56,363 nt of DNA from Octopus bimaculoides (lineage: Eukaryota). Shown here piece by piece: positions 6,053 to 46,113 of the stretch. Each line of letters starts with the position of its first letter. Position 1 is the stretch's first letter. The notes below the pieces were generated by a model. It saw nothing but the letters and a program-made list of their open reading frames with translations, did not search any database and was not told where the DNA came from. The position numbers and the translations under genes are program-made. The stretch spans positions 102,284,638 through 102,341,000 of the forward strand of contig NC_068983.1 in NCBI RefSeq assembly GCF_001194135.2. The letters are read 5' to 3'.

Positions 6053-6849
6053 CTTATTCCTATTTAGCTATTGCTGTCATTTTTTCAGTTTAAGTCGAGG
6101 TCAGCCACGATTAAACATTCTTATTATCGCAGGTTTCAAGATATGGTGACTCGGATTATTTGTATTCCCAACCACGCAATAGTAAAAAACACAAAGTGTA
6201 TTAATCCTGGGATTAATGGAATAGCTCGAACGTCGGACGGCATGTCTTGCGCAATGTGTTCCGACTCTGTGTATTCTGACTGAAAATCCCTCTCAGCCAT
6301 CAAAAAACGTAACACTTTTGTCAAGAGCTGCAATTGACAAATTATATCAGCAATTTGAGAAACCATTAGAAACAAGATCGACTGACACCACCACGCCATA
6401 TCGATAATTTAATTTCTATTATAATCCTGTTGTTGAAGTGCAACTTACATGTATACATATATTTTAGTTTTAGCAAAATGCTTATAAAGAAGCTTTTTAT
6501 AGCATGATATTGTACGAGAATTCTTTTCAATGCCCATTGCGAGTCATCGAATAACCTGCAGCATAGTAAAGGTATACCTTTGATACTTAGGTCATAGGTT
6601 CACCATAACTGACTTTAGCGGTTGTTCATTGGGTCTTTCATGACTTTCCTCTCGAGCTTTTAAATAAATTTGTAGCTAACTAAATGTCCTCACACCCTAC
6701 TAGAAACTGTAATCAGTTAGATGCCCACAAATCATATCGCTTCTGTCTTAAAAAGTTTAGAAAGAAAGAACACATTCGGTAATCTTCTAGACATACATAA
6801 ATAGGACGGTCACAGCTGGAACGTTTATAGTAGGTTACTTTGCTCACTG

Positions 6850-8430: not shown

Positions 8431-8924
8431 CACACACACACACACACACANNNNNNNNNNNNNNNNNNNNNNNNNNNNNNNNNNNNNNNNNNNNNNNNNN
8501 NNNNNNNNNNNNNNNNNNNNNNNNNNNNNNNNNNNNNNNNNNNNNNNNNNNNNNNNNNNNNNNNNNNNNNNNNNNNNNNNNNNNNNNNNNNNNNNNNNNN
8601 NNNNNNNNNNNNNNNNNNNNNNNNNNNNNNNNNNNNNNNNNNNNNNNNNNNNNNNNNNNNNNNNNNNNNNNNNNNNNNNNNNNNNNNNNNNNNNNNNNNN
8701 NNNNNNNNNNNNNNNNNNNNNNNNNNNNNNNNNNNTATATATATATATGCATATAAGAAGGGATGACCGAAAGGTGGACATCTAATATGCTAGAAAGAGG
8801 TCATCAACGACCCAACCACAAAGAAAAATAATGTTCTCCAGAAAAAAAATTCCGCAATGTATATATATATGCATGTATATATATATATATATATATATAT
8901 GCTTGCATATATGTATGTATGTAA

Positions 8925-10050: not shown

Positions 10051-10223
10051 AGGAGGATAGAAGGATAAGAAGAGAAAGTCAAAGTCGAGTAGCAGAGAGA
10101 GATATTTTGAGGGTGTTACTTTTTTTTTTTTACATTTTTCATTTTCCTTTCTTTACCCCGCATCCCCGGCTCTCAAACAATTTTCACTCACTTTAACTAT
10201 TCTACCTTCTCTGTCTCCAGCTC

Positions 10224-10274
<51 letters not shown>

Positions 10275-10345
10275 CTCTCTCTCTCTCCCTCTCTCTCCCT
10301 CGCACGCACGCACACACACACACACACGCGCGCGCGCTCGCGCGC
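9960..10345. repeat. Cluster of (GGT)/(GAT), (TTTC), (CT), (CA) and (CG) simple repeats
   Basis: Direct reading. Confidence 0.9.
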
Positions 10346-11263
10346 TCTCGCTTTATTGTTCTTTTCAAACATATCTAAAAATACTCTATTTTCATTTAAT
10401 ATAACATTAAACAACGAAGATTAAGTGAGCGTATGTCTCTCTGCACTTTCGTCTCCCTCTTCCCTCTCTTTCTCGCAAATGCACGCATATACTTTCCCTC
10501 CATTTCGTATCTCACACTTAAGCGGATACACCTAAATACATTCACATCACACANNNNNNNNNNNNNNNNNNNNNNNNNNNNNNNNNNNNNNNNNNNNNNN
10601 NNNNNNNNNNNNNNNNNNNNNNNNNNNNNNNNNNNNNNNNNNNNNNNNNNNNNNNNNNNNNNNNNNNNNNNNNNNNNNNNNNNNNNNNNNNNNNNNNNNN
10701 NNNNNNNNNNNNNNNNNNNNNNNNNNNNNNNNNNNNNNNNNNNNNNNNNNNNNNNNNNNNNNNNNNNNNNNNNNNNNNNNNNNNNNNNNNNNNNNNNNNN
10801 NNNNNNNNNNNNNNNNNNNNNNNNNNNNNNNNNNNNNNNNNNNNNNNNNNNNNNNNNNNNNNNNNNNNNNNNNNNNNNNNNNNNNNNNNNNNNNNNNNNN
10901 NNNNNNNNNNNNNNNNNNNNNNNNNNNNNNNNNNNNNNNNNNNNNNNNNNNNNNNNNNNNNNNNNNNNNNNNNNNNNNNNNNNNNNNNNNNNNNNNNNNN
11001 NNNNNNNNNNNNNNNNNNNNNNNNNNNNNNNNNNNNNNNNNNNNNNNNNNNNNNNNNNNNNNNNNNNNNNNNNNNNNNNNNNNNNNNNNNNNNNNNNNNN
11101 NNNNNNNNNNNNNNNNNNNNNNNNNNNNNNNNNNNNNNNNNNNNNNNNNNNNNNNNNNNNNNNNNNNNNNNNNNNNNNNNNNNNNNNNNNNNNNNNNNNN
11201 NNNNNNNNNNNNNNNNNNNNNNNNNNNNNNNNNNNNNNNNNNNNNNNNNNNNNNNNNNNNNNN

Positions 11264-11479
11264 TTCTTTTCTGCTCTAGGTATAAGGCCTGAAATTTTTG
11301 AGGAGGGGGCTGGTCAATTAAATCGACCTCAGTACGCAACTGGTACTTAATTTATCGACCCGGAAAGAATGAAAGGTAAAGTCGACCTCGGTGGAATTTG
11401 AACTCAGAACGTGAAGACAGACGAAATACCGCTAAGCCTTTCGCTCAGCGTGCTCACGTTTCTGCCAGTTCGCCGCCTT
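11264..11479 (-). mobile_element. SINE family A (same subfamily as 5358-5587)
   Basis: Shares the CAGTACGCAACTGG and GCCTTTCG diagnostic segments with the 5358 copy; abuts a gap. Confidence 0.85.
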
Positions 11480-11529
11480 AAGAAAAAAAGAGGATTCAAA
11501 ATAGAAGAAACTATTTATTTCCAATAGAT

Positions 11530-12095
11530 GCATGAATGTAATTTGAGTCTAGGTCTGGAGTTTGCTATGAAGTCATATTGAGGATACTGATGACTTTGAT
11601 TTTGCCTGGGATTGGACAAATGTGTCTGTTTATTGCAGGTTATAACTCTTTTATTGTTCTGGGGTTTTTTTCAACTCAAATTCCTGTGATGTATCATGAT
11701 ACATTTTACGTCACGCAGATCGATCTGGGCAGCAGCTTTCCCAAGAAGTCATATTAAGCTGTAGTTTTCGTGAGTACATCAACTTATCCTTATACCTAAG
11801 GATGGAACTTCTTTAATCGCAGTATCCCTCTGCTGGTTGGCCACACAAAAGAATTTCTGGAAGGCGATAATCTTTCATTCGTACATGTCCTACCCAATTG
11901 CGCTGAACTTTCAATAGCATACTTTTGATACCGGAGATATCACAGTTTTCTAAAATTTTGACATTTGATATATTGCCATTTTATGATGCAGATATTGCGC
12001 AGACAGCACATGTGAAAGGGCTTACGTCTCTTTATGTGTCTGTAGTTGGGAGTCCATACTCCTGCCCCGTACAAAAGTGTGTTCATAATACAAGA
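11530..12095 (-). mobile_element. RTE/BovB-like LINE 3' end relic
   Basis: Minus strand gives VMNTLLYGAGVWTPNYRHIKRRKPFHMCCLRNICIIKWQY / ISNVKILENCDISGIKSMLLKVQRNWVGHVRMKDYRLPEILLCGQ...LRYKDKL...WESCCPDRSA*R, then a degenerate terminal zinc finger (RHICPIPGK). Confidence 0.85.
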
Positions 12096-12235
12096 TTTGT
12101 ATACCCTTATTTTAGTTTTTTAAAAAAATTGATGTATATTTATATATATATATAACTTTATTCAATTGATACATTATTTTATACACATTCACACAAATTC
12201 GAATCAATACATATATATATATATATATATATATC

Positions 12236-12266
<31 letters not shown>

Positions 12267-14269
12267 ATTTACGTACATACACGCTTACATAGACGTGAGG
12301 GTGCGCCTTTAGTTTGTATAATGTTGTTTCTTGTTTCATATGTTTGGTTTTGTTATAATTTGTATGTTCAATGGAACTGGTGTAACTGATACATTTCTTT
12401 CTCATTGCCTTCATAAAGAGGCTAAGTTAATCCCTGGCGAGGTATAAGCTCAGAACGTGGAAGCTTAGATATGAATCCCTTTAATAATGTTTTGCTTACT
12501 TTAGACTAAGGCTAGACGTTTCTTGGTAAACGGTGTAATAATATTCTAGTAGCTCACCCTCGTACGCAACTGTTACTTGTCTTGTGCTGGTTTCTCTTCA
12601 TTAGGTACAAGAACAATTGTTCTAGAGGTCTTTTAGTCGACTACAATGAATCAAAAGAAAAATGTATTTATATAGGCACAAGACCTCAAATTTCGCCGAA
12701 GTGAATAGTTGATCATATCAACCCCAGGACGTGACTCGTAGTTTATTTTATCGGGAGGTGATTTTGAACTCAGAATGCAAGAAGCTGCAACAAAAATTCT
12801 TCGATGCTGTAATGATTCTGCCAAGTCACTGTCCTAACTATAGTTAGGACACTTGATAAGCCAAGCGAGGGGGCGTTCTACGTAGTTGCTTTACCAGTAA
12901 GAAACAGCCAGTAATCAAATGTCCTTCGAATTGTGCCTATAGTCCTCAGAAAGGAAGATGTTGAATGATTATAGTCTTAGCTCTATTTTACCTGGGGATA
13001 AAAACAAAATAAAACTCGCCTGAATGCTTTTGATAATAGATCTGCTCAATCGCTGCAGTGACAACTGATATTTGAAGGAACTTCCTCGTGGTCACTCGAT
13101 CCGCTAGAAATAGCAATGAAGTGTCCCTCAAAGGACACCCTACCATCTGAAAAATAGAAACACTGGAGAATACAGTTCACAGTACTGCATACCTGAAAAC
13201 ATCAGAAATTATCACAAATGAATTGCATTTTATCATAGCTCTTTTCGATCTCAGCTAAACTGGATCTAATAAACTACAACTACAATAACTGGTTTATTAT
13301 TTTTTTTATTAATATACGAAAGGCAAAGTCGACAAAAGACTAGATAAAAGTTTAGAACGTTGAGAACAAAGTCTCTAGATTTTGCTTTACTGTTTTTGCA
13401 TCCAAACTTCTCTTATTTATTTATTTATCTATGTATTTATTTAATCAGTTAGTTATGTACATATTTATTTAGATTAGAGAGATCGATGTAGACTTTGAGG
13501 GAAGTCCTCAGCGGACCAAAAATGCGAATTGGTTTAGATTCTTGACAAATGCAGATTCAGTTACAGCGGTAATACTCTTGAGGAATTTTCAACTGTTTCA
13601 ACTGATTAACGCTAACTCACATATGACACACAGGTAATCGGACGAAAGAACCAGCGAAGGAGCTTTCGCACGCTTGCTCAGCTTAATAAACTTAATAAAA
13701 TCTTCCAAGTTCACTCCACTACCTTACACAAGTGTTGATTTTATACCTTTTATTTAATTCTCGCAAGGAAATTTAAAAACATTACCATTTGTTCATTATA
13801 TGCCACTCGATATTGCAATCAGTGTTGCAATCAGTGCAACATCTTACTGGATCTAATCTTCATTATGTAATTCAGTAGTAGTGAAGAGTGTTCATCATAA
13901 ACACAACATCAGAAATAGAATATAGACTGTTGAAATTCCGGATGGTAAATTAGCTTCTTTTTAATGGTTCGTTATTTGAAACTCTTCAAAGTACCATAAA
14001 AAGAATAAATCACTTACGGCTGGTGATTAAATATATCCGAAAGCTGGTAAATTCTAGAAACTCGGTAACCAATACCTGATACACTGATGAAGCGAATTAA
14101 CTGCCAGCCTCGAAACTAAACCTGAATGATAGCAGATGATTTGCATTCATAACCCACGAACTGCCCTTCAGTATTTTACTCCTTATGCATTTACATTTAT
14201 GTGCACATTTACAGTTTTCCCCTTTTCACCCCCGCCACACACATATAAGCGTGTGTGTATGTGTGAAGG

Positions 14270-14460
14270 CACACAGCCTAATGATTAGGGTGCTGTACAC
14301 ACAGTCACGAGGTCGCAATTTCAATTCCCAGACCGGCTGCGAGTTGTGTTCCTGAGTAAAACACTTCATTTAATGTTGCTCTAGTCCATTCAGCTGCAGT
14401 TTCGTTCAGTGTAAATGTTGGTCTGCCTTTCTAGATAGCCGCCACGGTTTATGCGGGCAG
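14270..14460 (+). mobile_element. CORE-type tRNA SINE (family B-related), degenerate
   Basis: GGCACACAGCCTAATGATTAGGG head, CAATTTCAATTCCC B-box region, TGTGTTCCTGAGTAAAACACTT CORE-like segment. Confidence 0.65.
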
Positions 14461-14553
14461 GCCAACGATGCGAGAAGCTAAAACAATGCGAAGCCCATTG
14501 CGATTAGCAGTGTATAATAACGCCTGGTATTCTTCTCTATACCGTAATACAGT

Positions 14554-14605
<52 letters not shown>

Positions 14606-15324
14606 NNNNNNNNNNNNNNNNNNNNNNNNNNNNNNNNNNNNNNNNNNNNNNNNNNNNNNNNNNNNNNNNNNNNNNNNNNNNNNNNNNNNNNNNNNNNNNN
14701 NNNNNNNNNNNNNNNNNNNNNNNNNNNNNNNNNNNNNNNNNNNNNNNNNNNNNNNNNNNNNNNNNNNNNNNNNNNNNNNNNNNNNNNNNNNNNNNNNNNN
14801 NNNNNNNNNNNNNNNNNNNNNNNNNNNNNNNNNNNNNNNNNNNNNNNNNNNNNNNNNNNNNNNNNNNNNNNNNNNNNNNNNNNNNNNNNNNNNNNNNNNN
14901 NNNNNNNNNNNNNNNNNNNNNNNNNNNNNNNNNNNNNNNNNNNNNNNNNNNNNNNNNNNNNNNNNNNNNNNNNNNNNNNNNNNNNNNNNNNNNNNNNNNN
15001 NNNNNNNNNNNNNNNNNNNNNNNNNNNNNNNNNNNNNNNNNNNNNNNNNNNNNNNNNNNNNNNNNNNNNNNNNNNNNNNNNNNNNNNNNNNNNNNNNNNN
15101 NNNNNNNNNNNNNNNNNNNNNNNNNNNNNNNNNNNNNNNNNNNNNNNNNNNNNNNNNNNNNNNNNNNNNNNNNNNNNNNNNNNNNNNNNNNNNNNNNNNN
15201 NNNNNNNNNNNNNNNNNNNNNNNNNNNNNNNNNNNNNNNNNNNNNNNNNNNNNNNNNNNNNNNNNNNNNNNNNNNNNNNNNNNNNNNNNNNNNNNNNNNN
15301 NNNNNNNNNNNNNNNNNNNNNNNN

Positions 15325-15364
<40 letters not shown>

Positions 15365-15372
<8 letters not shown>

Positions 15373-15671
15373 CCCCAAAAGTGGCTGACGATGCTACTGT
15401 AGGTTATAGCCCCAGGAAGGCATCACCAGCCAGACTTGATACACACGGACATGAATTTCTGGGTATTGACCCGTCATCAGCGTGTGACAACCACCGCCTG
15501 GCCATGGGAAGTGATTCTCAGTGCAAACACATATACTTTTTCCAGTGAAGAAAAGTCACTGATCTCGAAAAAGGAGAAACAAGCAATAATAAATCTCTGA
15601 GATTTCTTCCTGGGGCTATAAGCTGCAGTAGCATCGTCCCTAATGGGTCACCCACTTTTAGGTGACAAATA
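15365..15671. mobile_element. About 300-bp inverted-repeat-bounded unit carrying a hammerhead ribozyme (MITE-like, or Penelope pLTR with an inverted tail)
   Basis: Arms 15387-15419 and 15606-15638 are 31/33 complementary. Outer arms 15365-15389 and 15647-15671 are 20/25. TA at both ends. Confidence 0.75.
15442..15486 (-). ncRNA. Minimal type-I hammerhead ribozyme motif
   Basis: CACACG CUGAUGA C GGGU CAAU ACCC A GAAA U UCAU GUC CGUGUG: 6-bp stem I, intact CUGAUGA, GAAA and GUC, 4-bp stem II. Confidence 0.75.
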
Positions 15672-16218
15672 TGCATCACGATGTCGTGCTGCTGCTGTTT
15701 ATATGTCGCTCAGAGATTTATTATTGCTATACATACATACATACATACATACATACATACATACATACATAATAGTTGTCTGGGCTATTCAGAAATGTCT
15801 ACTCCGAGTTGAGTACCTCTGTAATATCTGATAGCTTCCTAAGAACCTTAACGTGAAGTATAGGTATAATGCATTCTAACAAATGTTTATTAAGTCTCTT
15901 ATGCTGAGGCAGGAATACACACACACACACACACACACATGCACACATTCACTCACACACATTCACACACACACGCACACGTACACACACACATGTATAT
16001 ACATATATATATATACATGCATTATAAATATGTGTGTATATATTCATATGTACATATATATATAAATACGTATATATACGCACACATATAATGTATATCT
16101 ATGAGTAATTAGGTGTTTATAGCGTCTTAAGTAATGCGGAGCCGATGGAACCTGTTACTTGATACAACTAAATGCGTCGAATGCTATTTTCTTTTGTTTG
16201 TTCACATTTTTTGCATAC

Positions 16219-16530
16219 CCATCCATCCAACTATCCATCCATCCAACTATCCATCCATCCAACTATCCACCCATCCAACTATCCATCCATCCAACTATCC
16301 ATCCATCCAACTATCCATCCATCCAACTATCCATCCATCCAACTATCCATCCATCCAACTATCCATCCATCCAACTATCCATCCATCCAACTATCCATCC
16401 ATCCAACTATCCATCCATCCAACTATCCATCCATCCAACTATCCATCCATCCATTCATCCGTCCACCCATCCATCCATCTGTCTACCAATCCAACCACTC
16501 ACCCGTCCATCCATCCGTCTGTCCGTCTAC
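16219..16530. repeat. 16-bp minisatellite (CCATCCATCCAACTAT), about 14 units, decaying into (CCAT)n
   Basis: Direct reading; units are regular from 16219 to 16442. Confidence 0.95.
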
Positions 16531-17085
16531 ACAAGCATTCGCACAGCTATAAACAGCCGTACATCACTTAATTTCCAAGGCCAACATCACTTCCAGCAGT
16601 ATTTGGCGGGTTTTAAATTTAGGAAGCCACATTATATGTGTATTGCTATTATCATATTTGGAGGCAACTATGCTGATAAACAAATTAAATATATTAAATA
16701 TAACAGCTTGAGTATGAAATACAAAATATGTATATATTTTTACATGCAAAACAAGAGAAAGCAAAGAGCGGAGACTTTCAGGAGCTGAATATTTGAGTGT
16801 AAAATATATTTATATTAAAAGATATTTATATTAAAAGATCAAACTTACACAGTGTAAACGACAGAGAAAATTTATGGGGAGGAAGTAAGGTGCTATAAGT
16901 CCAACAGCTGTTTCTGGGGGCTCGGTAGATGTTGTTCATCACAATATACAAGCCATAATGGAAGCAATCGACATTGGATAAAAAGAGCCTCCGACATCAA
17001 GGTAGAAAAGATCTTAGAATTCAGATCATAGTGCAGAGAAGTTCAAAGGTGGAATGATTGAAAACTATCTATTTTGTGTTTATTA

Positions 17086-17131
<46 letters not shown>

Positions 17132-18409
17132 TGTGTAATTTATGTTTCTATCTAAGTCTATATGTGTCTATGTGTGTGTAACTATACATTTAAACTCTTT
17201 CCTGAAAATGGAAACATTTCATGTTAATGCTCTGATGAAGCAGGAAGATCCCTCACTGTCGCGTAACAGTGGATGTACATTTCCTTAAAGTCGTAAAGGC
17301 TGTAAGCTTATGAAAGCGGTTGCGTAACTTCTGTTCTTTTGCCATTAATCTATTAATACATACAAATGAATACAAACATGTGTGAATGTGTGTGCGTGCG
17401 TGCCTGTATGTGTAGCCCCGAAGCGTGTCGAGAAAATGGAGCTAAAATCCATGATTTATAGAATACCCTCTGAATGTATAGTTCGTGTGACTACTTGCTA
17501 AATGCATCTAAAAGCCTAGTTGTGGTATTTCTAACCGGTCGACAAATTAATTCTGCAACCCAAGAACAGGTACAGTAAGGCATAGTCTAGCTGACAGTTA
17601 TACGTATAGTTTCAATTTATGCGATTCTACTCACATGCTTAGCTCATTCTTAGACTATGTTAGAAGATAATTGCCTAGGGTACATGCAGTGAAATAGAAT
17701 CAGGTATTTCGGGATTATAAATCAAACCTCTTAACCACAGGCCTGTGCCTATGCCTATAAACGGCCATATTTGCGACAAATTAGGTCGTAATTTTTCGCT
17801 TAACGGATCATCTCTATTCCTTTTCTGGCTCATATAGTTAATATGTGCCTCCATATGAAGTCTTGGAGCACTAAAGCTCAGTTGTCAATGATAAATTTAG
17901 TACAAAGAAGAGTACGTACTGTCAATCTCAGATCAAAACTCTGAGTACTCATTTCACCTGCTCAATGTAAAGGTCAAAGTCTCATCAATAAGTGTATGCT
18001 TTTAGCAATAAATCTCAAACCGGTTAGCGTTGTAAATTGAATGCTTCGGTCAGTCGGTTATCTTTGCGTCGCAGTTCCACAACAGTGGCTACAACAGCAG
18101 TAACATTGCACTAATGAAGGAACCGCTAAGCCTTTGTTTGACTTACTACGAATATTAGCCAAATCTACTTTGAATCACACCCAACAGACTTAATAGTGGA
18201 AATATATACTGGATAATGAAGTTCCTGATAAACTATGCATTTAAAAAAGACAGGAGGGTCACAACTACAATACTTCTGATCAAAGGTTTGCTCAATTAAG
18301 GCTTACCTGGGGGCTACACAACAATAACAACAGCAACAAATAAGATAAATATATTTTGGATTTCTTTGCGATATCTTACAGTAAATATATTCAAATGTGT
18401 CCCTATATT

Positions 18410-18615
18410 TGTTGCAGCGCATCGTTAGCATGTCGGGCGAAATGCTTAGCGGTATTTCGTGTCTCTATACGTTCTGAGTTCATATTCCACCGACGTCACC
18501 TTTTGCCTTTTATCCTTTCGAGATCGATAAAATAAGTACCAGTTGAACACCGGGGTCAATGTAATCGACGTAACCCCGCCCCCGAAATTGCTGGCCTTGT
18601 GCCAAACTTTGAAGC
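18410..18615 (+). mobile_element. SINE family A
   Basis: CGTTAGCATGTCGGGCGAAATGCTTAGCGG...CATCC-like central domain...GGCCTTGTGCCAAACTTTGAA tail. Confidence 0.8.
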
Positions 18616-19711
18616 CTATATTTCTTGAAGTGACGTAGTTTTATTTTGAAAGGCTAAAACTATAGTTTGTTTTAAACTGTAGTTAGAATATACTTTTATA
18701 TTTAGATATATAAAGCATGTGGTTGGCCGAATCAGTAGAGAGGTGGACAAACAATGTATATATAATATATATTCTTTGTATATTTCATCAAGTGGGAAAG
18801 CATCGGACAAAATACCTTAGATCTTTTTAGCGTCCCTTCTCATGATTACCTTAGAAGGATGATGTAACCAAAAATTAGTAATGGGAATGTTAAAATGGCC
18901 ACTTTTGGCTAAAGTTCGACGGCTTTGATTATATAAAATCTTAGTATACATTAGATCACATAGCTTATAGCTCTTCCCCATCGGTTCTTCCTCTGCTTCT
19001 GGAGAGTCCAAGAACTTTCTGGGATTGATAAAAAAAAGTATCAGTTAGGTACTGGGTTCGATTTAATCGAATGTTCCCTAGTGTTACAAATTATTATATC
19101 TCTATACTCTGAAAAAGAGAGTAAATTTACGAGACTTAAACGATATTTAAACACTTCTAGCTAGGACAATAATAACCCATTAAACCTATATGATATATGA
19201 AGAGTAGAGGTTTATATAAGATTTATTTCTAAGTTTTGAAATATGATGAACCACTCGGAAGAAAGTTATAACATTAATCAGAAAAAGATGCAAGTATATA
19301 CGGATGGCTATACATGCATATTTAGAGGTTTATACTCTGGCTAGGGGTTCACCTACAATTAGTGTACTTACAGTAATTATGAATTTATTTATAAGGATAC
19401 AAGTTGGGTCAAAAAGTTTAGAATTGTAATAATTTAACTTGTAAGCAAAACTGTAAAATTTAGCAGCTCAACCCAAGCATACAAAGTATGACAACTAAAT
19501 TTCTGTCTAAGTTTCAGCGAGACATCACTTGCTTGAAAGTTACTGATGAATAACGAAAGCTATAATGTGTGTAAAGCATGTTCACACATAATGTGTGTAT
19601 AAGTATGTTTAAGCATGTGTGTATAAGTATTTCAAAACCTTCCTCTTCAATTCATTAATTAAGTTCTTCACCTTCATGAAAGGTATCAGTTTCTAAACAA
19701 GGTTTTTATTG

Positions 19712-20060
19712 CTAGTAAGTTGGCAGAATCGTTAGAATGCCGGAAAAATGCTTTCCGTTATTTGTTCCAGATTTTTACGTTCTGAGTTTAAATTTCACTG
19801 AAGTGAACTTTCCTTTCATGTTTCCGGTTTGATAAAATAAAATGCCAGTCAAGTACTGAGAACCGATGTCATCAACTAACCCTGTTCCTTCGAAATTACT
19901 GCCCTCTTGCCTATATTAGAAATCCTTAATTGCGTTACGTTAAGATTGGTTGCTTGGCTGAACATCGAACAAATGCTCCGCAGTATTCTGCTGTGCCTCT
20001 TTGCGTTCTGAGTCTAAACTCACCGGAGTTGATAAAATAAGCAACAAATAAAATATTTGG
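19712..20060 (+). mobile_element. Two adjacent degenerate family A SINEs (the second internally deleted)
   Basis: Heads at about 19715 and 19945 with recognisable central domains. Confidence 0.65.
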
Positions 20061-20067
20061 GTTGAAA

Positions 20068-20290
20068 ACCTTTTTGTTACCATATTTCTAATGAAATTCA
20101 CCACCATTTTCATTGAAAATAATGAAAAATTTTATAAGATAAGTTTGCCATTATTAAGCTGGTGTTTGGAACATAAAATTAACCTGACACTTTGATGGAA
20201 GGTTTTAATTTAGATCTCTTTAAGACAATCTGTTTGTATCATAGAACCAGAGGCACTTTCAGTTGGGTTGGTATCAAAAAATTTTTTTAA
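20068..20290. mobile_element. Degenerate piggyBac-like MITE
   Basis: Terminal TTTTTGTTACCA versus TGGTATCAAAAA (11/12 inverted match); TTAA context is eroded. Confidence 0.55.
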
Positions 20291-20704
20291 ATAACATACC
20301 CGGTTGTTGCTTTCACGCATCGCTTACCTCTGGCCCAGGGAGATTCTGGGCTAGAGAAGTCCCTAAATAAGTGTGAAAACCAAATAAGGGGAATTAAATC
20401 AGTCTTGGCTAGGATTAATATCATTTTATCATTCGCACTGTTGAAAACAGCAATCGCGTGCCATTATTACCATACCTCAAGATGTGTAGGCTTGTATTTA
20501 TGCCAGATATAATAATTATTATACCCAGTACTGGCGTTTCTTAAAACTGGACCTGTATTCCTAGCAGTAACGTCAGTTAATTCCCTTCATCACTACAGAT
20601 AGGCGACATCACAATGAGTGTCACTAGTCACCTCAACTGAATAAAAGACGTATGTCGACATATTATTTCCCGGTTGTGTTGTTAGAACTCCCATCTTATA
20701 TAAT

Positions 20705-20825
20705 CCGTGTTTCAAATTTTGGAAGGCAAAGTTGACCTCAGGGGTATTTGGACTCAGAATATAATGTCGGAAGAAATGCCGCTAAGCATTTTGTCCGGTA
20801 CTATGGCGATTCTGCTAGCTCGTTC
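20705..20825 (-). mobile_element. Internally deleted family A SINE
   Basis: Tail TTTCAAATTTTGG joined directly to GGCAAAGTTGACCTC...GCTAGCTCG head. Confidence 0.65.
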
Positions 20826-21510
20826 AGCGTACTTAGGTTTCTACGCAATACAGCTTTTCAAAAGTAGATATTAATTGAATTAATAGTAATGATAAGATAT
20901 TGACTATAAGATAGTGATGTTAATTTTTAACTTGGTCTAAAGTGTACAATACTTTCATTTGGTCAATGGAGATAAATGAGATAATGAAATCAAATTTATT
21001 TATTCATTTTTGGTTCACTGCTTCGTATTTGTGAGTTGAAGGGCTATCGGAGCGTCTTTAACATTTAAAGTTCAAGCCTGTGAGATTAATGAAGTGTGTT
21101 CTAATATACTGCAATAAATTGAATCAATAGCATCATCTACTCGTTTATCAATAGCATCATTTACTCGTTTATAGCCATAAAACAATAAATCTAGATCCAT
21201 TTATGATTATGTAGATATGTGCACATAGAACTTATTTCCTAGAGCCAAGCCGTCAAAATAAGACAATCTATATTTAATATAGCAATAATTTTATTGATAT
21301 TCACTGCAGAATTATTAATATTTACGGTAGAATCTGTATAACAGTTGGACAATTGTCTAACAGTATTCGCCACGGTCTAATTTGCCTTTCATGTCGCTGG
21401 ATGGATAAGGATGGTTCCTAGTAATGTACTAGGAGTCAGTTCAATCGTCTGTATTCTTCTATTATGAATTTCTAGCCTGGTGTCAGCGTAAAAAAGAAAG
21501 TCATTACTGT

Positions 21511-21780
21511 TGTAGGTATGGCTGTATGGTGAAAGAAGCCCGTTTTGCAATCACGTTTCGCAATCAGCTCAACAGAGCACTTTGTGCAGGTGTCACTTCG
21601 GGAAGGCCAGTGAGTAAATTTGGTGGATGGAAACTGTGTGTAAGACCGTCATATATGTATATGTGTGTGTGTGTATGCGCGCGCGCGTGTGCAAGACTTA
21701 AAAAATAAGTACTGGGATTAACTTGTTCGACATAACCACAGTCCAATGACTGAAATAGGTAAAACAAATTAAATAAATAG
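21511..21780 (+). mobile_element. tRNA SINE family D (carries an internal microsatellite), internally deleted
   Basis: GTAGGTATGGCTGTATGGTGAAAG head, GGAAACTGTGTGTAAGACCGTC plus (TA/TG)n, and CAGTCCAATGACTGAAA tail. Confidence 0.7.
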
Positions 21781-22427
21781 ATGATTCGTAGTGATCTGGG
21801 CGTGGTGAAAACAATTGAGTTTCTCGGACTTGTCAAATTGATAGCTGATGTTAGCACCTTTCAAATCTAGCAATGAGAATAAATGAAAAGTTCTAACTAG
21901 AAAAGATGTCTAAAAGCTTTTAAAATATGAAATAAAAAACAGGAAAAATGTTGCATTCGATGAAACACTTCTGAAATTGGATCGCTCAAATAAAGGCTTC
22001 TGCTTGCACATCTAGAGACAAATATAGGCATTTATATTTAAAAAATACTTTTATGTCTGGTGTTTCACTATGATATATAAAGAAACCTTTCAATATAAAA
22101 TAGAAGAATGTTATCTGAGAAAGATACAAATGTAATAATTTTCTTCGGAACAGTCAAATTACGAAGAAAAGAAATGATTAGAACTTATGAATATAAATAT
22201 ATATAAGATTGCATACGATAAAATTCATCTAACGAAAGATTATTGCAGGAGGATTTAGAGATCAGGAGCAGATACATTCAAGATGGAATCAGACCGAAAT
22301 ATAGCTTATGTTGATGTACATATTCTTAGCTTATATTAATGTCATTTTATGATTATTATTATTTAAATTATGTATTTATATGTAAATTATATATTTCTGT
22401 GTATATATGCTCGCTTTTCTTTTGCAG

Positions 22428-23825
22428 AGAGCTGATGTAATCGTATTTCCTGAATATGGATTGTTCGGAGTATTTGACATTGGTGCAATGCACAGCCATG
22501 ACTCTATTCATCCGTTCTTAGAAACAATACCTGAGGTAGGACATGCCAAGTGGAACCCGTGCGAAGAAAGAGATTTGGATGAAGATGATTATGTTATCCA
22601 GAAGAAGCTCAGTTGTTTAGCAAGAGATAACAGAATACACATTGTGGCTAGCTTAGGCGAGAAAGCAAGATGCAGCCGCCGAACAAATTATAAATGCCCT
22701 AGCCATAGTTATTTCCATTACAGTAGTACGGTTGTGTTTTCGGAGAAAGGAAATCTCGTAGCCAAGTACCGTAGAAAAGCTTTGTTGAATGAACCATATT
22801 TTGACAGCCCGGATGAATTCAGTATTGCCGTTTTCGAGACTACTCAGAACAAATTTGCCGTAGTGAGTTCTTATGACACAATGTTGAAAGAACCAATAAC
22901 GGAATTATTAGATAAGCGGAAAGTGAAGAACATAATTATTCCCAATGTTTGGCGATCGAATTCACCTTTGCTTAGTAGTGTTCAATGGCACTCTAGTTGG
23001 GCAATTGGAAATGAGGTTAACGTACTAGCTGCTACTATACATGACACAAACATTGGGTCACATGGAAGTGGAATTTACTTCCCATATAGTGAAAGTTCCT
23101 ATTATAACAAACCTGATTCTTCAAGAGGCCACTTAATCATTGAACATGTGAAAATGAATCGTTATTCAAGACCAAAGAAACCAGTCATTCCTTATTTATC
23201 AGTTTCCTTTGGCAAATTCTCGTATCACAGTGTCAAAATGCTCGGTGAAGAAATTCGTTTTAAATTTGTAGATTTGACAAAATACACCGATAATGTAAGC
23301 ATATGTAGTGGTTCTTTCTGTTGTAAAGTAGATTACTCTCCCGAATCTTTAGAAACGGAGAAATATAGCCTGGGGATCTACAAGGGCATGATAAATGCTC
23401 TAGACAGACGCATGTACTTTGAGATCTGCACAGTCATGAATTGTAATAGAATATGCGGGAAGGAAATCTTCTCTGCTAATACATACTTTGCAAGATTTGG
23501 TCTTTCTGGTTATAATTTCACGGCTGATCATATTTATCCACAGGTGGTATTTATGAATAAAGGAGATCAAATTCTTGATGATGTGTGGCAGTATGAACAT
23601 GGCAAAATAAACTCAAAACGTATGTTCAACAATCCCTTGCATTCAGCAACAATGATTGGACGGATCTATAACGAGGACAAATATATTACTACATTTAAGT
23701 CAAGCTTCCCTAGTGAGGACAGGAGAACAAGATCTGACAGAAAGAACGGTGCAGTGTCAAGATTTACTCCCACAGTATTTGTTGTAGTCATGGGGACTAT
23801 CCTTTCAGTACTTAGCTTCTCTTGA
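22428..23825 (+). CDS. Terminal coding exon of a vanin/biotinidase (pantetheinase, nitrilase-superfamily) protein with GPI-type C-terminus; catalytic Lys and Cys substituted
   Basis: Polypyrimidine tract plus CAG acceptor at 22411-22427, phase 0, then 465 codons to TGA at 23823-23825. Family motifs: VIVFPEYG, WNPC, LSCLA, C-x8-CP, GSGIY, C-x3-FCC, YSLG, EIC-x4-C, GRIYNED. The ORF-track ATG at 22407 lies in the acceptor tract and is probably not the start. Confidence 0.93.
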   Translation, partial: RADVIVFPEYGLFGVFDIGAMHSHDSIHPFLETIPEVGHAKWNPCEERDLDEDDYVIQKKLSCLARDNRIHIVASLGEKARCSRRTNYKCPSHSYFHYSSTVVFSEKGNLVAKYRRKALLNEPYFDSPDEFSIAVFETTQNKFAVVSSYDTMLKEPITELLDKRKVKNIIIPNVWRSNSPLLSSVQWHSSWAIGNEVNVLAATIHDTNIGSHGSGIYFPYSESSYYNKPDSSRGHLIIEHVKMNRYSRPKKPVIPYLSVSFGKFSYHSVKMLGEEIRFKFVDLTKYTDNVSICSGSFCCKVDYSPESLETEKYSLGIYKGMINALDRRMYFEICTVMNCNRICGKEIFSANTYFARFGLSGYNFTADHIYPQVVFMNKGDQILDDVWQYEHGKINSKRMFNNPLHSATMIGRIYNEDKYITTFKSSFPSEDRRTRSDRKNGAVSRFTPTVFVVVMGTILSVLSFS

Positions 23826-24836: not shown

Positions 24837-26621
24837 AAACTTTTGAAATAAAATTTTTGTTAAAGCTCAAATATTTCCCCTCTTAATNNNNNNNNNNNNN
24901 NNNNNNNNNNNNNNNNNNNNNNNNNNNNNNNNNNNNNNNNNNNNNNNNNNNNNNNNNNNNNNNNNNNNNNNNNNNNNNNNNNNNNNNNNNNNNNNNNNNN
25001 NNNNNNNNNNNNNNNNNNNNNNNNNNNNNNNNNNNNNNNNNNNNNNNNNNNNNNNNNNNNNNNNNNNNNNNNNNNNNNNNNNNNNNNNNNNNNNNNNNNN
25101 NNNNNNNNNNNNNNNNNNNNNNNNNNNNNNNNNNNNNNNNNNNNNNNNNNNNNNNNNNNNNNNNNNNNNNNNNNNNNNNNNNNNNNNNNNNNNNNNNNNN
25201 NNNNNNNNNNNNNNNNNNNNNNNNNNNNNNNNNNNNNNNNNNNNNNNNNNNNNNNNNNNNNNNNNNNNNNNNNNNNNNNNNNNNNNNNNNNNNNNNNNNN
25301 NATATATATAATTAAATACACAACCGAAAGAGCTGCTACTAGTTTTATGCTATTATGATACTTGAACAAGCATATTTATAAAATACGCCATGTATCTTAA
25401 AGCAATCTTTCAGGCTCAAAACACACACACACACACACAAAAAGACATGCATACACGTTCATAATTTTTGACTGTTCTACTTTTGCTCGCATGCTTGATT
25501 TTCGTTGCAATATGTTTCAATGTAGTTAGTGTTTCTATTTACCAAATACGCGTGTATGCTTTTAACCTAGCGGCAGACGTCATAGTAGCAGTAAGCTCCA
25601 GGTGAGTCGCGTCCACAACCCGCTGTCCGCAAGCCATTGAATGATATTACGAATACCCTGCTCCAACATATTTACTAGACAAAAGAATTATGCATTTCAA
25701 TTTAATAATAAAATGAGAATAAAATTGTTTGTACTATATTTGGATTCTGTACAGCAATTGACCAATTATTAAGGTTTACTTTTGAAAACCTTTTTGCTGT
25801 TTATATACCTGTATATTTTATTATTCTATGTTTCTGCGTATTTCATTGCATGTAAACATTCGCATAATAAACCGATGTTCTTTTGAAGTACTTTTGCATG
25901 AATTGATCGGACTTACTTGATAGTGATTAAGAAAAGAAAAAGACAAAAAAAAAATGAAACATCAACAAAAGTTCTCACTGGGTATTATTATATAATTATT
26001 AATTGCCCTTGTGGCAAAAAATTTGAAATCATTATATAATTATTAATATAATTACATTTTAACCCAATCTTGAATTTTTTGTTGATAATTTTATTAATTG
26101 TTTGTAGGAGATTCAGAAAATATTTCCACAGATGTAAGACATTTTTCTAGTTCTAGCTAGATAACAATAACTACAATTTCTTTGTGAATAAACCTATTGA
26201 CCTTAAAAAAAAAAACAGTAGAAATCTTATTTCAGCATCATCATCATAATTATAAAGTTTTTTTAACGTTACAATAATATAATAATTATTATTATTGTAG
26301 TATTATTATAACATTTTATTAATCGTTATAATATTTATCATAACGTTTTTCTAAATCGCATCTATTATATTTAAACTATATCCATTTTCTTTGAAGTAAA
26401 GCCTTTTGATATAACTATCTATTTATTATGTGTATTTATTTTATATCAAATTTTTGTTATGACTAGTTGTTTATTGTATAACGTCATACAGCTTAACCTA
26501 GTTTTATATAACTTTGTGCTGTCTTTCCACGCGTTTGTAACCCCTTTGCTTGTTTTTTTTTCTTATATGTGTGAACGGCTTCTTGGTGGCAAATAAAGAA
26601 ATTATCATCAACATCATCACA

Positions 26622-27390: not shown

Positions 27391-27952
27391 NNNNNNNNNN
27401 NNNNNNNNNNNNNNNNNNNNNNNNNNNNNNNNNNNNNNNNNNNNNNNNNNNNNNNNNNNNNNNNNNNNNNNNNNNNNNNNNNNNNNNNNNNNNNNNNNNN
27501 NNNNNNNNNNNNNNNNNNNNNNNNNNNNNNNNNNNNNNNNNNNNNNNNNNNNNNNNNNNNNNNNNNNNNNNNNNNNNNNNNNNNNNNNNNNNNNNNNNNN
27601 NNNNNNNNNNNNNNNNNNNNNNNNNNNNNNNNNNNNNNNNNNNNNNNNNNNNNNNNNNNNNNNNNNNNNNNNNNNNNNNNNNNNNNNNNNNNNNNNNNNN
27701 NNNNNNNNNNNNNNNNNNNNNNNNNNNNNNNNNNNNNNNNNNNNNNNNNNNNNNNNNNNNNNNNNNNNNNNNNNNNNNNNNNNNNNNNNNNNNNNNNNNN
27801 NNNNNNNNNNNNNNNNNNNNNNNNNNNNNNNNNNNNNNNNNNNNNNNNNNNNNNNNNNNNNNNNNNNNNNNNNNNNNNNNNNNNNNNNNNNNNNNNNNNN
27901 NNNNNNNNNNNNNNNNNNNNTTCTTCTTCTTCTTCTTCTTCTTCTTCTTCTT

Positions 27953-36729: not shown

Positions 36730-36925
36730 AAGGCGGAGAGCTGGCGGAATCGTTAGCACACCGGGCGAAATACTTTGCGGCATTTCGTCCTTCTTCACAT
36801 TTTGAGTTCAAATTCCACCGAGGTTCACTTTCGGGGTCGACAGAATAAGTACAAATTGAGTACTGGGGTCGATGTAATCAACTTATCCCACCTTCGAAAT
36901 TGCCAGCCTTGTGCCAAAAGTTGAA
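36730..36925 (+). mobile_element. SINE family A
   Basis: GGCGGAGAGCTGGCGGAATCGTTAGC head through CCTTGTGCCAAAAGTTGAAA tail. Confidence 0.85.
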
Positions 36926-37014
36926 ATCAATGTTAATGGTATTAAAGATAGCTTTTATGGTGATCATGGCACTTTCGATATTATTCTGCAATTTAAGTTA
37001 CAAAATTTATCTTT

Positions 37015-46097: not shown

Positions 46098-46113
46098 ACG
46101 TTTTATATATTCT

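What the first reader, a model, noticed from the sequence alone, without database searches (positions are those of the whole stretch)
22428..23825. Vanin/biotinidase-family protein with an intact frame but a dismantled catalytic triad (candidate pseudoenzyme)
Established: vanins and biotinidase use the nitrilase Glu-Lys-Cys triad in the motifs FPE, RYHKxxL and FTCFD. Seen: Glu is retained (GAA 22452-22454). The Lys position reads Arg (AKYRRKALL, AGA 22773-22775) and the nucleophile Cys reads Ser (FAVVSSYD, TCT 22869-22871). The neighbouring conserved YNT reads YSS and AAN reads AAT. Yet 465 codons have no stop or frameshift amid heavily decayed repeats, and the structural Cys pattern, base domain and GPI-type tail are kept. 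Inference: selection maintains a non-catalytic cell-surface protein, such as a pantetheine- or biotinyl-ligand binder, a receptor or adhesion partner via the base domain, or a regulator of an active paralogue. Several active-site changes with scaffold retention argue against a single sequencing error or simple pseudogene decay.
Basis: partly seen in the sequence, partly recalled or inferred. Interest (0 to 1): 0.82.

Follow-up and report, generated by a model that had tools for sequence, protein, structure and literature searches.

The report
Octopus vanin-like gene with Glu-Arg-Ser site
This is the large last exon of an Octopus bimaculoides vanin/biotinidase-family gene whose catalytic Lys and Cys really are replaced by Arg and Ser, but this very protein and its "E-R-S triad" were already described in a 2017 study of cephalopod symplectin-like proteins, so it is a confirmed but known oddity.

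Summary
Window 22428-23825 (+) is a 465-codon terminal exon encoding a CN-hydrolase domain plus a Vanin_C base domain. Aligned to human vanin-1, Glu is kept (GAA 22452), the catalytic Lys reads Arg (AGA 22773) and the nucleophile Cys reads Ser (TCT 22869).

It is not new. The window is Octopus bimaculoides, and this protein (Ocbimv22003864m.p) is in the dataset of Francis, Christianson & Haddock 2017 (PeerJ 5:e3633). It belongs to their cephalopod "Group 3" symplectin/biotinidase-like proteins. They state that all Group 3 proteins carry Ser, and they mark E-K-S and E-R-S triads in their tree.

What I add:
- **Timing.** Ser (with Phe→Tyr and Asn→Thr) is shared by squids and octopods. Arg arose in Octopodiformes (Vampyroteuthis, Argonauta, Octopus), and Octopoda lost further conserved residues.
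- **Selection.** Purifying selection is real but weak (dN/dS about 0.3 at depth, 0.66 against O. sinensis). Indels are rare and in frame.
- **Gene model.** Exon 1 lies in assembly gap 10554-11263, so both public models are N-terminally wrong.
- **Paralogues.** Octopus keeps a canonical E-K-C Group 2 paralogue.
- **Family.** Loss of the Cys recurs across it (18 of 150 representatives).

The most likely reading is a crippled or non-catalytic, probably GPI-anchored, ligand-binding paralogue. A serine hydrolase remains possible.

The parts
22428..23822 (+). Coding part of the terminal exon (exon 2, phase 0): 465 codons of the O. bimaculoides Group 3 symplectin/biotinidase-like (vanin-like) protein.
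   Evidence: Translation. Pfam CN_hydrolase plus Vanin_C. E = 2.4e-62 to human vanin-1. Identical to P0016, P0017 and P0018 (O. bimaculoides). The orthologous exon in O. sinensis starts at the same residue.
23823..23825 (+). Stop codon TGA.
22410..22427 (+). 3' end of the intron: polypyrimidine tract and AG acceptor (ctcgcttttcttttgcag). It contains the in-frame intronic ATG at 22407-22409 that the NCBI model P0016 wrongly uses as its start.
   Evidence: Sequence. P0016 begins MLAFLLQ|RADV. O. sinensis and O. vulgaris proteins splice ...AERS|RADV here.
10554..11263 (+). Assembly gap (710 N) that by synteny hides exon 1. Exon 1 is about 81 codons: signal peptide and the first strand/helix of the nitrilase domain. 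If the gap is sized correctly, it should lie near 10720-10965.
   Evidence: O. sinensis L001 9523-9833 matches window 10221-10553, and L001 10636-13568 matches window 11264-14246. O. sinensis exon 1 is L001 10001-10243. No exon-1-like sequence is found anywhere in the window.
11264..22427 (+). The sequenced part of the single long intron (about 11-12 kb). It is colinear with the O. sinensis intron at 92.7-93.6% identity.
22452..22454 (+). Catalytic Glu retained (Glu9 of the exon, motif VFPEYG; vanin-1 E79).
   Evidence: Invariant in all Group 3 proteins and 100% in canonical family members.
22773..22775 (+). Arg116 (AGA) at the catalytic Lys position (vanin-1 K178). It is followed by a non-conserved Lys (AAA 22776-22778).
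   Evidence: Register. Arg in Octopus species (AGA) and Argonauta (CGA). Arg in Vampyroteuthis and another Octopus transcript. Lys (AAG) in squid Group 3.
22791..22793 (+). Second active-site Glu of the nitrilase superfamily retained (Glu122, NEPYFD).
   Evidence: Invariant in alignment A1.
22869..22874 (+). Ser148 (TCT) at the nucleophile Cys position (vanin-1 C211), followed by Tyr149 where the family has Phe.
   Evidence: TCT in four octopods and two squids. All Group 3 proteins have Ser followed by Tyr or His. Published in PMC5541922.
23034..23036 (+). Thr203 where 88% of canonical family members have Asn. The change is shared by all Group 3 proteins.
22650..22652 (+). Ser75 where the family has Asn (V-A-N motif). 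The change is seen in Octopoda only; squids and Vampyroteuthis keep Asn.
22722..22727 (+). Ser99-Ser100 where the family has Asn-Thr (YNT motif). The Asn is lost in Octopodiformes and kept in squids.
23253..23678 (+). Vanin_C base domain (residues 276-417). It includes Cys343 (TGC 23454-23456), the equivalent of vanin-1 C411 and symplectin C390.
   Evidence: Pfam. Alignment. Beta-rich segment of the model with pLDDT mostly 80-90. Cysteine equivalences follow PMC5541922.
23745..23822 (+). GPI-signal-like C-terminus: small residues N-G-A (candidate attachment site), spacer VSRFTPT, and hydrophobic end VFVVVMGTILSVLSFS.
   Evidence: Highest hydropathy of the exon lies at residues 447-465. It is modelled as a terminal helix 449-464 after a disordered linker. 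A comparable tail is present in all Group 3 proteins. No GPI predictor was run.
21526..21609 (+). Not part of the gene. This is the spurious first exon of the 2015 gene model Ocbimv22003864m.p / UniRef A0A0L8HWS2 (MVKEARFAITFRNQLNRALCAGVTSGRP).
   Evidence: ORF. P0018. It has no counterpart in the O. sinensis, O. vulgaris, Argonauta or Vampyroteuthis proteins.

Best explanation
**Identity (near certain).** This is exon 2, the last of two coding exons, of the Octopus bimaculoides member of cephalopod "Group 3" symplectin/biotinidase-like proteins. These belong to the vanin/biotinidase branch of the nitrilase superfamily. The O. sinensis and O. vulgaris orthologues are annotated as "vascular non-inflammatory molecule 3" and "biotinidase 3".

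**History (shown).** After the cephalopod-specific duplications, the Group 3 ancestor changed the nucleophile Cys to Ser, the following Phe to Tyr, and a conserved Asn to Thr. The Octopodiformes stem then changed the catalytic Lys to Arg and lost the Asn of YNT. Octopoda lost further family-conserved residues (Asn75, Phe140).

**Mechanism (inferred).** The protein is made with a signal peptide from exon 1, folds like vanin-1 with its disulfide set, and is probably tethered to the outside of the cell by a GPI anchor. Its old active-site pocket is kept but is chemically blunted. With Ser for Cys and Arg for Lys, it most likely can no longer turn over amides such as pantetheine or biocytin at a useful rate. 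It would then act as a binding protein for a small amide or acyl ligand or for a protein partner, possibly including slow or single-turnover acylation of the Ser. Ordinary hydrolase work is left to the canonical E-K-C Group 2 paralogue that Octopus retains.
For: **Identity**
- The exon is identical to the O. bimaculoides proteins P0016 and P0018.
- P0018 equals Ocbimv22003864m.p, which sits in the Group 3 clade of the published tree.
- The best named hits are O. sinensis VNN3 (89% identity) and squid "Symplectin/biotinidase-like protein 3".
- Pfam finds both domains.
- The AlphaFold model (pLDDT 75.6, pTM 0.76) matches vanin-1 4CYF with TM 0.78 over 428 columns.

**History**
- I compared 61 positions that are at least 80% conserved in 131 canonical members. 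All Group 3 proteins changed C148S, F149Y/H and N203T.
- Octopods additionally changed K116R, N75S, N99S/I and F140Q/S. All Cys, Pro and Gly scaffold positions are kept.
- Vampyroteuthis already has YRR and SSYD.

**Retention under selection**
- dN/dS is 0.27-0.32 between Octopus species at dS of about 0.26 (p about 1e-10 to 1e-12), and 0.30-0.35 against Argonauta.
- The exon has 2 indel events against about 8.7 expected at the intron rate, and both are multiples of 3.
- Arg is kept through an AGA/CGA switch.
- Full-length spliced transcripts exist in an Octopus transcriptome (JR438964.1) and in squid RNA assemblies.

**Blunted chemistry**
- Engineered Cys-to-Ser variants of nitrilase-superfamily enzymes keep ligand binding but lose reactivity. 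For MtCPA C158S, [quoted passage not shown] (PMC4812014).
- Lnt C387S forms an O-acyl intermediate but cannot pass it on (PMC6828757).
- Group 3 evolves under weaker constraint (omega 0.46-0.66 in shallow pairs) than the canonical Group 2 exon (0.23).

**Division of labour**
- O. bimaculoides P0195 and O. sinensis P0196 are canonical E-K-C proteins.
Against: - No activity or binding datum exists for any Group 3 protein.
- Glu9, Glu122, Ser148 and Asp150 are invariant from squids to octopods. Arg116 is invariant from Vampyroteuthis to Octopus. The most conserved blocks of the protein are those around the old catalytic residues. That pattern is what a working active site would also show, and the authors who described the group consider Ser a possible nucleophile.
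- The GPI anchor and the signal peptide are inferred. Exon 1 is unseen in this genome.
- Weak constraint on the youngest branches (omega 0.66, p = 0.086) leaves room for recent relaxation.
- The Group 2 control pair has dS of 0.25 against 0.075 here, so those two genes may not be strict orthologues and the comparison of omega values is rough.
Confidence: 0.55

Rival explanations
1. It is a working hydrolase or acyltransferase that uses Ser148 as nucleophile. Glu9 acts as base, and Arg116 and Glu122 stabilise the intermediate. This would be a natural Ser variant of the nitrilase-superfamily site with a changed substrate, perhaps an ester or an activated amide.
For: [quoted passage not shown]
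- Glu, the second Glu, Ser and Asp are invariant, and Arg is codon-switched but maintained, over the whole group.
- Ser is always accompanied by the same neighbouring Phe-to-Tyr/His change, including in the independent Group 2 cases (P0194 SYD, P0197 GYD). This suggests adaptive retuning rather than decay.
- Lnt C387S shows the fold can acylate a Ser.
Against: - Engineered Cys-to-Ser variants in this superfamily are inactive or stall.
- Octopods additionally lost the catalytic Lys and several family-conserved residues.
- Constraint is weaker than in the canonical paralogue.
- Sister duplicates carry Gly at the same position (P0197, and 6 other family representatives). Gly cannot be a nucleophile, which shows that the family tolerates truly dead sites.
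Confidence: 0.27
2. The gene is in early decay in O. bimaculoides, that is a young unitary pseudogene or a gene without its first exon. Its open frame would simply not have been hit yet.
For: - dN/dS against O. sinensis is 0.66 and not significantly below 1 (p = 0.086).
- Exon identity (94.7%) is barely above intron identity (92.7-93.6%).
- Exon 1 is not visible in the window, and both public models lack a proper N-terminus.
Against: - The missing exon coincides exactly with a 710-N assembly gap that is flanked by colinear sequence.
- The exon has 465 codons with no stop.
- It has only 2 indels, both in frame, against about 8.7 expected (Poisson P about 0.008).
- A three-taxon split gives omega of about 0.5 on the O. 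bimaculoides branch (from values).
- The acceptor site is intact.
Confidence: 0.06
3. The Arg and Ser codons are sequencing or assembly errors, or they are corrected at RNA level by cephalopod A-to-I editing.
For: Each change is a single base away from Lys (AAA) or Cys (TGT). Cephalopods edit mRNA extensively (background).
Against: - The same codons are found in four independent octopod genome or read assemblies, and the same residues in transcripts.
- A-to-I editing reads A as G. It cannot turn AGA into AAA, and TCT contains no A. This follows from the genetic code.
Confidence: 0.01
4. It is a symplectin-type photoprotein or coelenterazine-binding protein that uses the base-domain cysteine.
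For: It belongs to the same cephalopod family expansion as symplectin. The equivalent of the dehydrocoelenterazine-binding Cys390 is present (Cys343).
Against: - That cysteine is conserved in essentially the whole family, including human vanin-1 and biotinidase.
- This protein is in Group 3, and Octopus is listed as non-luminous in that study.
Confidence: 0.03

Closest known systems
Cephalopod Group 3 symplectin/biotinidase-like proteins (Francis, Christianson & Haddock 2017, PeerJ 5:e3633; e.g. UniProt 'Symplectin/biotinidase-like protein 3' of Dosidicus gigas, Octopoteuthis deletron and Chiroteuthis calyx; O. sinensis XP_029634192; O. vulgaris CAI9719979)
   Same: It is a member. The O. bimaculoides model of this locus is in their alignment and tree. 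It shares the Ser-Tyr nucleophile motif, the domain pair, the cysteine pattern and the hydrophobic tail. The two-exon gene structure is the same in O. sinensis.
   Different: Squid members keep the catalytic Lys (E-K-S), whereas octopodiform members have Arg (E-R-S). Octopoda have lost further conserved residues (Asn75, Asn99, Phe140). Octopus and Argonauta are only 53% identical, against 68-85% among oegopsid squids.
Human vanin-1 / pantetheinase (PDB 4CYF) and biotinidase
   Same: It has the same two-domain fold (TM 0.78; 30% identity over 428 aligned columns in the Foldseek match). Both active-site Glu residues and the disulfide cysteines are retained. The tail is GPI-type, as in vanin-1.
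   Different: The Lys178 position is Arg and the Cys211 position is Ser. YNT reads YSS and the A-x-N Asn reads Thr. No enzymatic activity has been shown.
Octopus Group 2 paralogues (O. bimaculoides P0195 and P0194; O. sinensis P0196 and P0197)
   Same: They are from the same family and have the same two-exon architecture and similar length and tail. P0194 (Ser) and P0197 (Gly) have independently lost the nucleophile Cys, again with Phe changed to Tyr.
   Different: P0195 and P0196 keep the full E-K-C site and all other conserved residues. Identity to the window protein is low (their Argonauta orthologue P0073 is 28% identical). By their contig sizes they lie on other sequence records than the window gene. 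Constraint is stronger (omega 0.23).
Engineered Cys-to-Ser variants of nitrilase-superfamily enzymes (E. coli Lnt C387S; Medicago CPA C158S, PDB 5H8K/5H8L; Nesterenkonia amidase C145S, PDB 5NZ5)
   Same: They have the same fold with Ser at the nucleophile elbow. They show what such a site does: it binds ligand, reacts poorly, and may trap an O-acyl intermediate.
   Different: They are laboratory mutants of active enzymes. They are not naturally maintained proteins, and they keep the catalytic Lys.
Symplectin, the photoprotein of Sthenoteuthis oualaniensis
   Same: It comes from the same cephalopod family expansion. The base-domain cysteine that binds dehydrocoelenterazine is conserved.
   Different: It is in a different clade, one that is absent from octopodiforms. 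Symplectin keeps the E-K-C triad. Nothing links the octopus protein to light production.

Membership tests
Vanin/biotinidase family (nitrilase superfamily) | CN_hydrolase (nitrilase-fold) domain | tested here: met
   PF00795 scores 40.3 bits against a cut-off of 23.2. The domain lacks its first ~65-80 residues here because exon 1 is in a gap. The full O. sinensis orthologue scores 54 bits.
Vanin/biotinidase family (nitrilase superfamily) | C-terminal Vanin_C base domain | tested here: met
   PF19018 scores 88 bits against a cut-off of 23.4, over residues 276-417.
Vanin/biotinidase family (nitrilase superfamily) | Overall fold of vanin-1 | tested here: met
   The AlphaFold2 model has pLDDT 75.6. 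The Foldseek top hit is 4cyf_A with E = 8e-36, TM 0.78 and rmsd 3.0 over 428 columns.
Vanin/biotinidase family (nitrilase superfamily) | Glu-Lys-Cys catalytic triad (vanin-1 E79, K178, C211) | tested here: not met
   The triad reads Glu9-Arg116-Ser148 in the vanin-1 register. It is confirmed in a 167-sequence family alignment. The protein is therefore a sequence and structural member, not a demonstrated catalytic member.
Vanin/biotinidase family (nitrilase superfamily) | Conserved disulfide cysteines | tested here: met
   All 10 Cys of the exon (45, 63, 82, 90, 293, 298, 299, 334, 339, 343) fall in columns that are 82-99% Cys in canonical members.
Vanin/biotinidase family (nitrilase superfamily) | Secretory signal peptide, and a GPI anchor as in vanin-1 | tested here: inconclusive
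   The N-terminus is hidden in gap 10554-11263. Orthologues start with a hydrophobic leader. The C-terminal N-G-A, spacer and 16-residue hydrophobic tail fit a GPI signal by inspection only.
Vanin/biotinidase family (nitrilase superfamily) | Pantetheinase or biotinidase activity | not testable with these tools
   This needs recombinant protein and enzyme assays.
Cephalopod Group 3 symplectin/biotinidase-like proteins | Placement in the Group 3 clade | tested here: met
   Ocbimv22003864m.p (identical over the exon to the window translation) groups with an Octopus vulgaris transcript and Vampyroteuthis. That clade is sister to the squid Group 3 clade, with support of 100 in the published Newick tree. 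The closest named hits are Group 3 proteins.
Cephalopod Group 3 symplectin/biotinidase-like proteins | Ser at the nucleophile position, usually followed by Tyr | tested here: met
   The motif is SSYD here and TSYD or TSHD in squids. [quoted passage not shown]
Symplectin (photoprotein) | Membership of the symplectin clade | tested here: not met
   [quoted passage not shown] This protein is in Group 3.
Symplectin (photoprotein) | Dehydrocoelenterazine-binding cysteine (C390) | tested here: met
   The equivalent Cys343 is present. The residue is conserved in nearly the whole family, so it is not diagnostic.
Pseudogene | Stops, frameshifts or a lost splice site | tested here: not met
   There is no stop in 465 codons. 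The AG acceptor is intact. The only two indels against O. sinensis are 3 and 15 nt long.
Pseudogene | Neutral evolution (dN/dS about 1) | tested here: inconclusive
   Neutrality is clearly rejected in the deeper comparisons (0.27-0.35, p < 1e-10). It is not rejected for the O. bimaculoides and O. sinensis pair alone (0.66, p = 0.086).

The most novel reading that the evidence does not exclude
Group 3 proteins, including this octopus E-R-E-S form, are genuine enzymes. They would be the first natural members of the nitrilase superfamily to use a serine nucleophile. In octopodiforms an arginine would replace the catalytic lysine, and the enzymes would act on a substrate class different from pantetheine or biocytin.
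Probability: 0.15. Interest if true: 0.6.

Novelty: already known. Interest (0 to 1): 0.25.

Why it matters
It matters little as a discovery. The changed triad of this exact protein was published in 2017.

It has modest value as a case study. The cephalopod Group 3 clade is an old, expressed vanin-family lineage under weak purifying selection. Its active site was altered in two datable steps: Cys to Ser before the squid-octopus split, and Lys to Arg in Octopodiformes. A canonical paralogue persists alongside it. That makes it a clean natural system for asking whether a nitrilase-fold site can work with serine, or what a dead ecto-amidase is kept for.

There are also practical points. Both public O. 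bimaculoides gene models of this locus have false N-termini because exon 1 lies in an assembly gap. In addition, about 12% of vanin-family representatives lack the nucleophile Cys, so automatic "pantetheinase" or "biotinidase" names in invertebrate genomes should not be read as activity.

Tried and rejected
1. **Search for exon 1 in the window.** I used the N-termini of the O. sinensis, Argonauta and Octopoteuthis orthologues with permissive tblastn settings. Only noise came back. Synteny placing the exon in gap 10554-11263 explains this.
2. **Idea that Octopus has no Cys-type family member at all.** This came from seeing that the O. bimaculoides Group 2 protein in the paper's supplement is E-K-S. 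I rejected it because P0195 (O. bimaculoides) and P0196 (O. sinensis) are canonical E-K-C proteins.
3. **Canonical Group 2 gene as a same-species-pair control for dN/dS.** It gives omega of 0.23, but dS is 0.25 against 0.075 at this locus. The pair may therefore be out-paralogues, and I use the comparison only qualitatively.
4. **A Lys one residue downstream (AAA 22776-22778) as a shifted catalytic Lys.** I rejected this because that position is Met, Thr or Ser in other octopods.
5. **RNA-editing rescue.** This is excluded by codon logic.
6. **Tandem paralogues in the window.** There are none. tblastn with 14 family members hits only this exon.
7. **Mapping the changed residues onto the vanin-1 pocket.** This was not possible. 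The structure paper (Boersma et al. 2014) is not held, and model coordinates are not exposed.
8. **Literature searches.** A search for 'nitrilase superfamily' plus 'pseudoenzyme' found 0 papers. The gene id found 0 papers. A search on octopus plus vanin found nothing beyond the 2017 paper.
9. **Other features of the window.** Pfam on two other long ORFs found nothing. Rfam and tRNA scans of the window found nothing.
Full report
**1. What is at the coordinates**

Window 22428-23825 on the + strand translates into 465 codons followed by TGA. The sequence just upstream is a polypyrimidine tract ending in AG at 22427, so this is an exon entered in phase 0. It is the only long genuine open frame in the 56-kb window. 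It runs 479 codons stop to stop, against 217 for the next longest, which is a minisatellite artefact. The chance of 465 stop-free codons at the local base composition is about 1e-15 to 1e-16.

Pfam finds a CN_hydrolase domain and a Vanin_C domain, both above the curated cut-offs. phmmer against the PDB gives human vanin-1 (4CYF) at E = 2.4e-62 over residues 3-418.

**2.

In the vanin-1 register:
- FPE is kept (Glu9, GAA 22452-22454).
- The YHK Lys aligns with the second Arg of YRRK (Arg116, AGA 22773-22775).
- The FTCFD Cys aligns with the second Ser of VSSYD (Ser148, TCT 22869-22871).

The codons were read directly. YNT reads YSS, and the conserved Asn of A-x-N reads Thr.

The superfamily's second active-site Glu is retained (Glu122). 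The residue after Arg116 is Lys, but orthologues have Met, Thr or Ser there, so it is not a conserved shifted Lys.

**3. Source and gene model**

The exon is identical to three database proteins of Octopus bimaculoides. None of them has a proper N-terminus. The 2015 model (Ocbimv22003864m.p = UniRef A0A0L8HWS2) borrows a spurious exon at 21526-21609. The NCBI model starts at an intronic ATG at 22407.

The O. sinensis and O. vulgaris orthologues (552 aa, 89-90% identical) have 81 further N-terminal residues, with a hydrophobic leader. In O. sinensis the gene has two coding exons 13.4 kb apart. The O. sinensis locus is colinear with the window, and its exon 1 falls exactly into the 710-N gap at 10554-11263. 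Exon 1 is therefore unsequenced rather than demonstrably lost.

**4. Already published**

The named squid homologues are "Symplectin/biotinidase-like protein 3". Francis, Christianson & Haddock 2017 (PMC5541922) defined four cephalopod groups of this family.
- They note that the Ser is usually followed by Tyr.
- They mark E-K-S and E-R-S triads in their Figure 1.
- They suggest Ser could still be a nucleophile.

Their supplementary alignment and tree contain this very protein. It sits in the clade (Vampyroteuthis,(Ocbimv22003864m.p, Octopus vulgaris JR438964.1)), which is sister to squid Group 3. I found no later paper on it.

**5. What the comparison adds**

I took the 150 best family representatives from an exhaustive HMMER search and aligned them with the earlier hits.

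I then compared 61 positions that are at least 80% conserved in 131 canonical E-K-C members:
- Every Group 3 protein changed only three of them: Cys148 to Ser, Phe149 to Tyr or His, and Asn203 to Thr.
- Octopods changed more: Lys116 to Arg, Asn75 to Ser, Asn99 to Ser or Ile, Phe140 to Gln or Ser, and partly Arg24, Thr100, Gly141 and Gly144.
- All Cys, Pro and Gly scaffold positions are retained.

The Vampyroteuthis transcript already has YRR, SSYD and YST but keeps Asn75 and Phe140. The order of events is therefore Cys to Ser before the squid-octopus split (about 270 My), then Lys to Arg in stem Octopodiformes, then further erosion in Octopoda.

The Ser codon is TCT in four octopods and two squids. 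The Arg codon is AGA in Octopus and CGA in Argonauta, so Arg is maintained through a synonymous change.

**6. Selection**

Pairwise Nei-Gojobori estimates on exon 2:

| Comparison | dN/dS | dS | Test against neutrality |
|---|---|---|---|
| O. bimaculoides vs O. sinensis | 0.66 | 0.075 | p = 0.086 |
| Each of those two vs a third Octopus (SRR11869384) | 0.27-0.32 | about 0.26 | p about 1e-10 to 1e-12 |
| The three Octopus sequences vs Argonauta | 0.30-0.35 | above 1 (saturated) | p about 2e-17 (tested for O. bimaculoides only) |

Between O. bimaculoides and O. sinensis the exon is 94.7% identical, against 92.7-93.6% for the intron. However, it has 2 indel events where about 8.7 are expected at the intron rate, and both are multiples of three.

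Two squid Group 3 transcripts give 0.46-0.50. The canonical Group 2 exon gives 0.23, with the caveat that its dS is three times higher, so the pair may not be orthologous.

Taken together, purifying selection is long-term but weak, and the reading frame is protected. This is not a pseudogene.

Expression is documented by a full-length spliced Octopus transcript in the paper's supplement. It is also documented by contiguous full-length squid coding sequences in RNA-sized contigs. I have no expression evidence for O. bimaculoides itself.

**7. Structure**

The AlphaFold2 model, built with a 15-sequence alignment, has pLDDT 75.6 and pTM 0.76. The low-confidence segments are the interdomain linker (227-251) and the pre-tail linker (423-449). 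A terminal helix spans 449-464.

Foldseek finds vanin-1 first, with TM 0.78 over 428 columns, followed by ordinary nitrilase-fold amidases.

The tail (N-G-A, a 7-residue spacer, then 16 hydrophobic residues) looks like a GPI signal. This is by inspection only.

**8. Context in the family**

Octopus keeps canonical E-K-C Group 2 paralogues (P0195 in O. bimaculoides, P0196 in O. sinensis). Their young duplicates have again lost the Cys: P0194 has Ser and P0197 has Gly, both followed by Tyr.

Outside Group 3, 18 of 150 family representatives lack the Cys (9 Ser, 6 Gly, and one each of Asn, Thr and Ala). The ten of these (nine Ser, one Asn) whose names I looked up include scallop, clam, vent snail, scorpion, spider and bryozoan proteins. 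Nucleophile loss after duplication is thus a recurring theme in this family, not a singular event.

**9. Mechanism**

Two engineered precedents in the same superfamily show what Ser at the nucleophile elbow does:
- Medicago CPA C158S keeps binding but has strongly diminished reactivity (PMC4812014).
- E. coli Lnt C387S becomes O-acylated but cannot transfer the acyl group (PMC6828757).

The octopod protein also has the extra Lys-to-Arg change, has lost other conserved residues, evolves under relaxed constraint, and coexists with an intact paralogue. I therefore rate a crippled or non-catalytic, extracellular and probably GPI-anchored binding protein as most likely (about 0.55).

The main rival is a real serine-based enzyme (about 0.27). 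It is kept alive by the strict conservation of Glu, the second Glu, Ser, Asp and Arg, and by the repeated Phe-to-Tyr co-change.

Recent decay (0.06), a symplectin-like photoprotein role (0.03) and sequencing error or RNA-editing rescue (0.01) are unlikely. A-to-I editing cannot convert AGA to AAA, and TCT contains no A.

**10. Verdict**

The finding is already known for this exact protein. The added value lies in four things:
- the dated two-step erosion of the site;
- the selection estimates;
- the corrected gene model;
- the family-wide frequency of Cys loss.

Noticed in passing
window 10554-11263 (also 2282-2894, 8451-8735, 14606-15324, 24888-25301, 27391-27920, 42071-42267): The window contains seven runs of N, which are assembly gaps. 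By synteny with O. sinensis, the one at 10554-11263 swallows exon 1 of the vanin-like gene.
   Followed up: yes
window 21526-21609 and 22407-22427: Both public O. bimaculoides models of this gene have false N-termini. The 2015 model uses a spurious exon (MVKEARFAITFRNQLNRALCAGVTSGRP). The NCBI model uses an intronic ATG that gives MLAFLLQ.
   Followed up: yes
window about 5371-5591, 5844-6056, 11264-11487, 18421-18620, 36730-36931, 41722-41942, 45883-46098: An interspersed repeat of about 200 bp occurs in both orientations. It is also present several times in the O. sinensis locus, at 70-89% identity between copies. One copy abuts the exon-1 gap, which may be why the assembly broke there. The window gave no tRNA or Rfam match.
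   Followed up: partly
window 16219-16530: A minisatellite of a 16-nt unit (CCATCCATCCAACTAT, 16.6 copies, 94% matches) lies inside the intron. It creates the fake ORFs at 16134-16788.
   Followed up: partly
proteins P0194-P0197 (other chromosomes of O. bimaculoides and O. sinensis); loci L004, L005: Octopus Group 2 paralogues come in pairs. One member is canonical E-K-C (P0195, P0196). The other has independently lost the Cys: Ser in O. bimaculoides P0194 and Gly in O. sinensis P0197. Both are followed by Tyr instead of Phe. L004 and L005 show the same two-exon architecture as Group 3.
   Followed up: partly
family representatives P0020-P0166: 18 of 150 non-Group-3 vanin-family representatives lack the nucleophile Cys (9 Ser, 6 Gly, and one each of Asn, Thr and Ala). 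P0057, from an unnamed ENA organism, is another E-R-x-S protein outside cephalopods.
   Followed up: partly
L003 (Logan SRR11869384 contig, 2335 nt): This contig comes from a third Octopus-like species, and its exon 2 is 85-90% identical at protein level. It carries intron sequence upstream of the exon, so it is genomic or unspliced. It also reads 11 codons past the usual stop position, so the tail end differs.
   Followed up: no
window 44517-45011 (-): A 164-aa ORF that looked transposase-like by eye had no Pfam match. Its nature is unresolved.
   Followed up: partly
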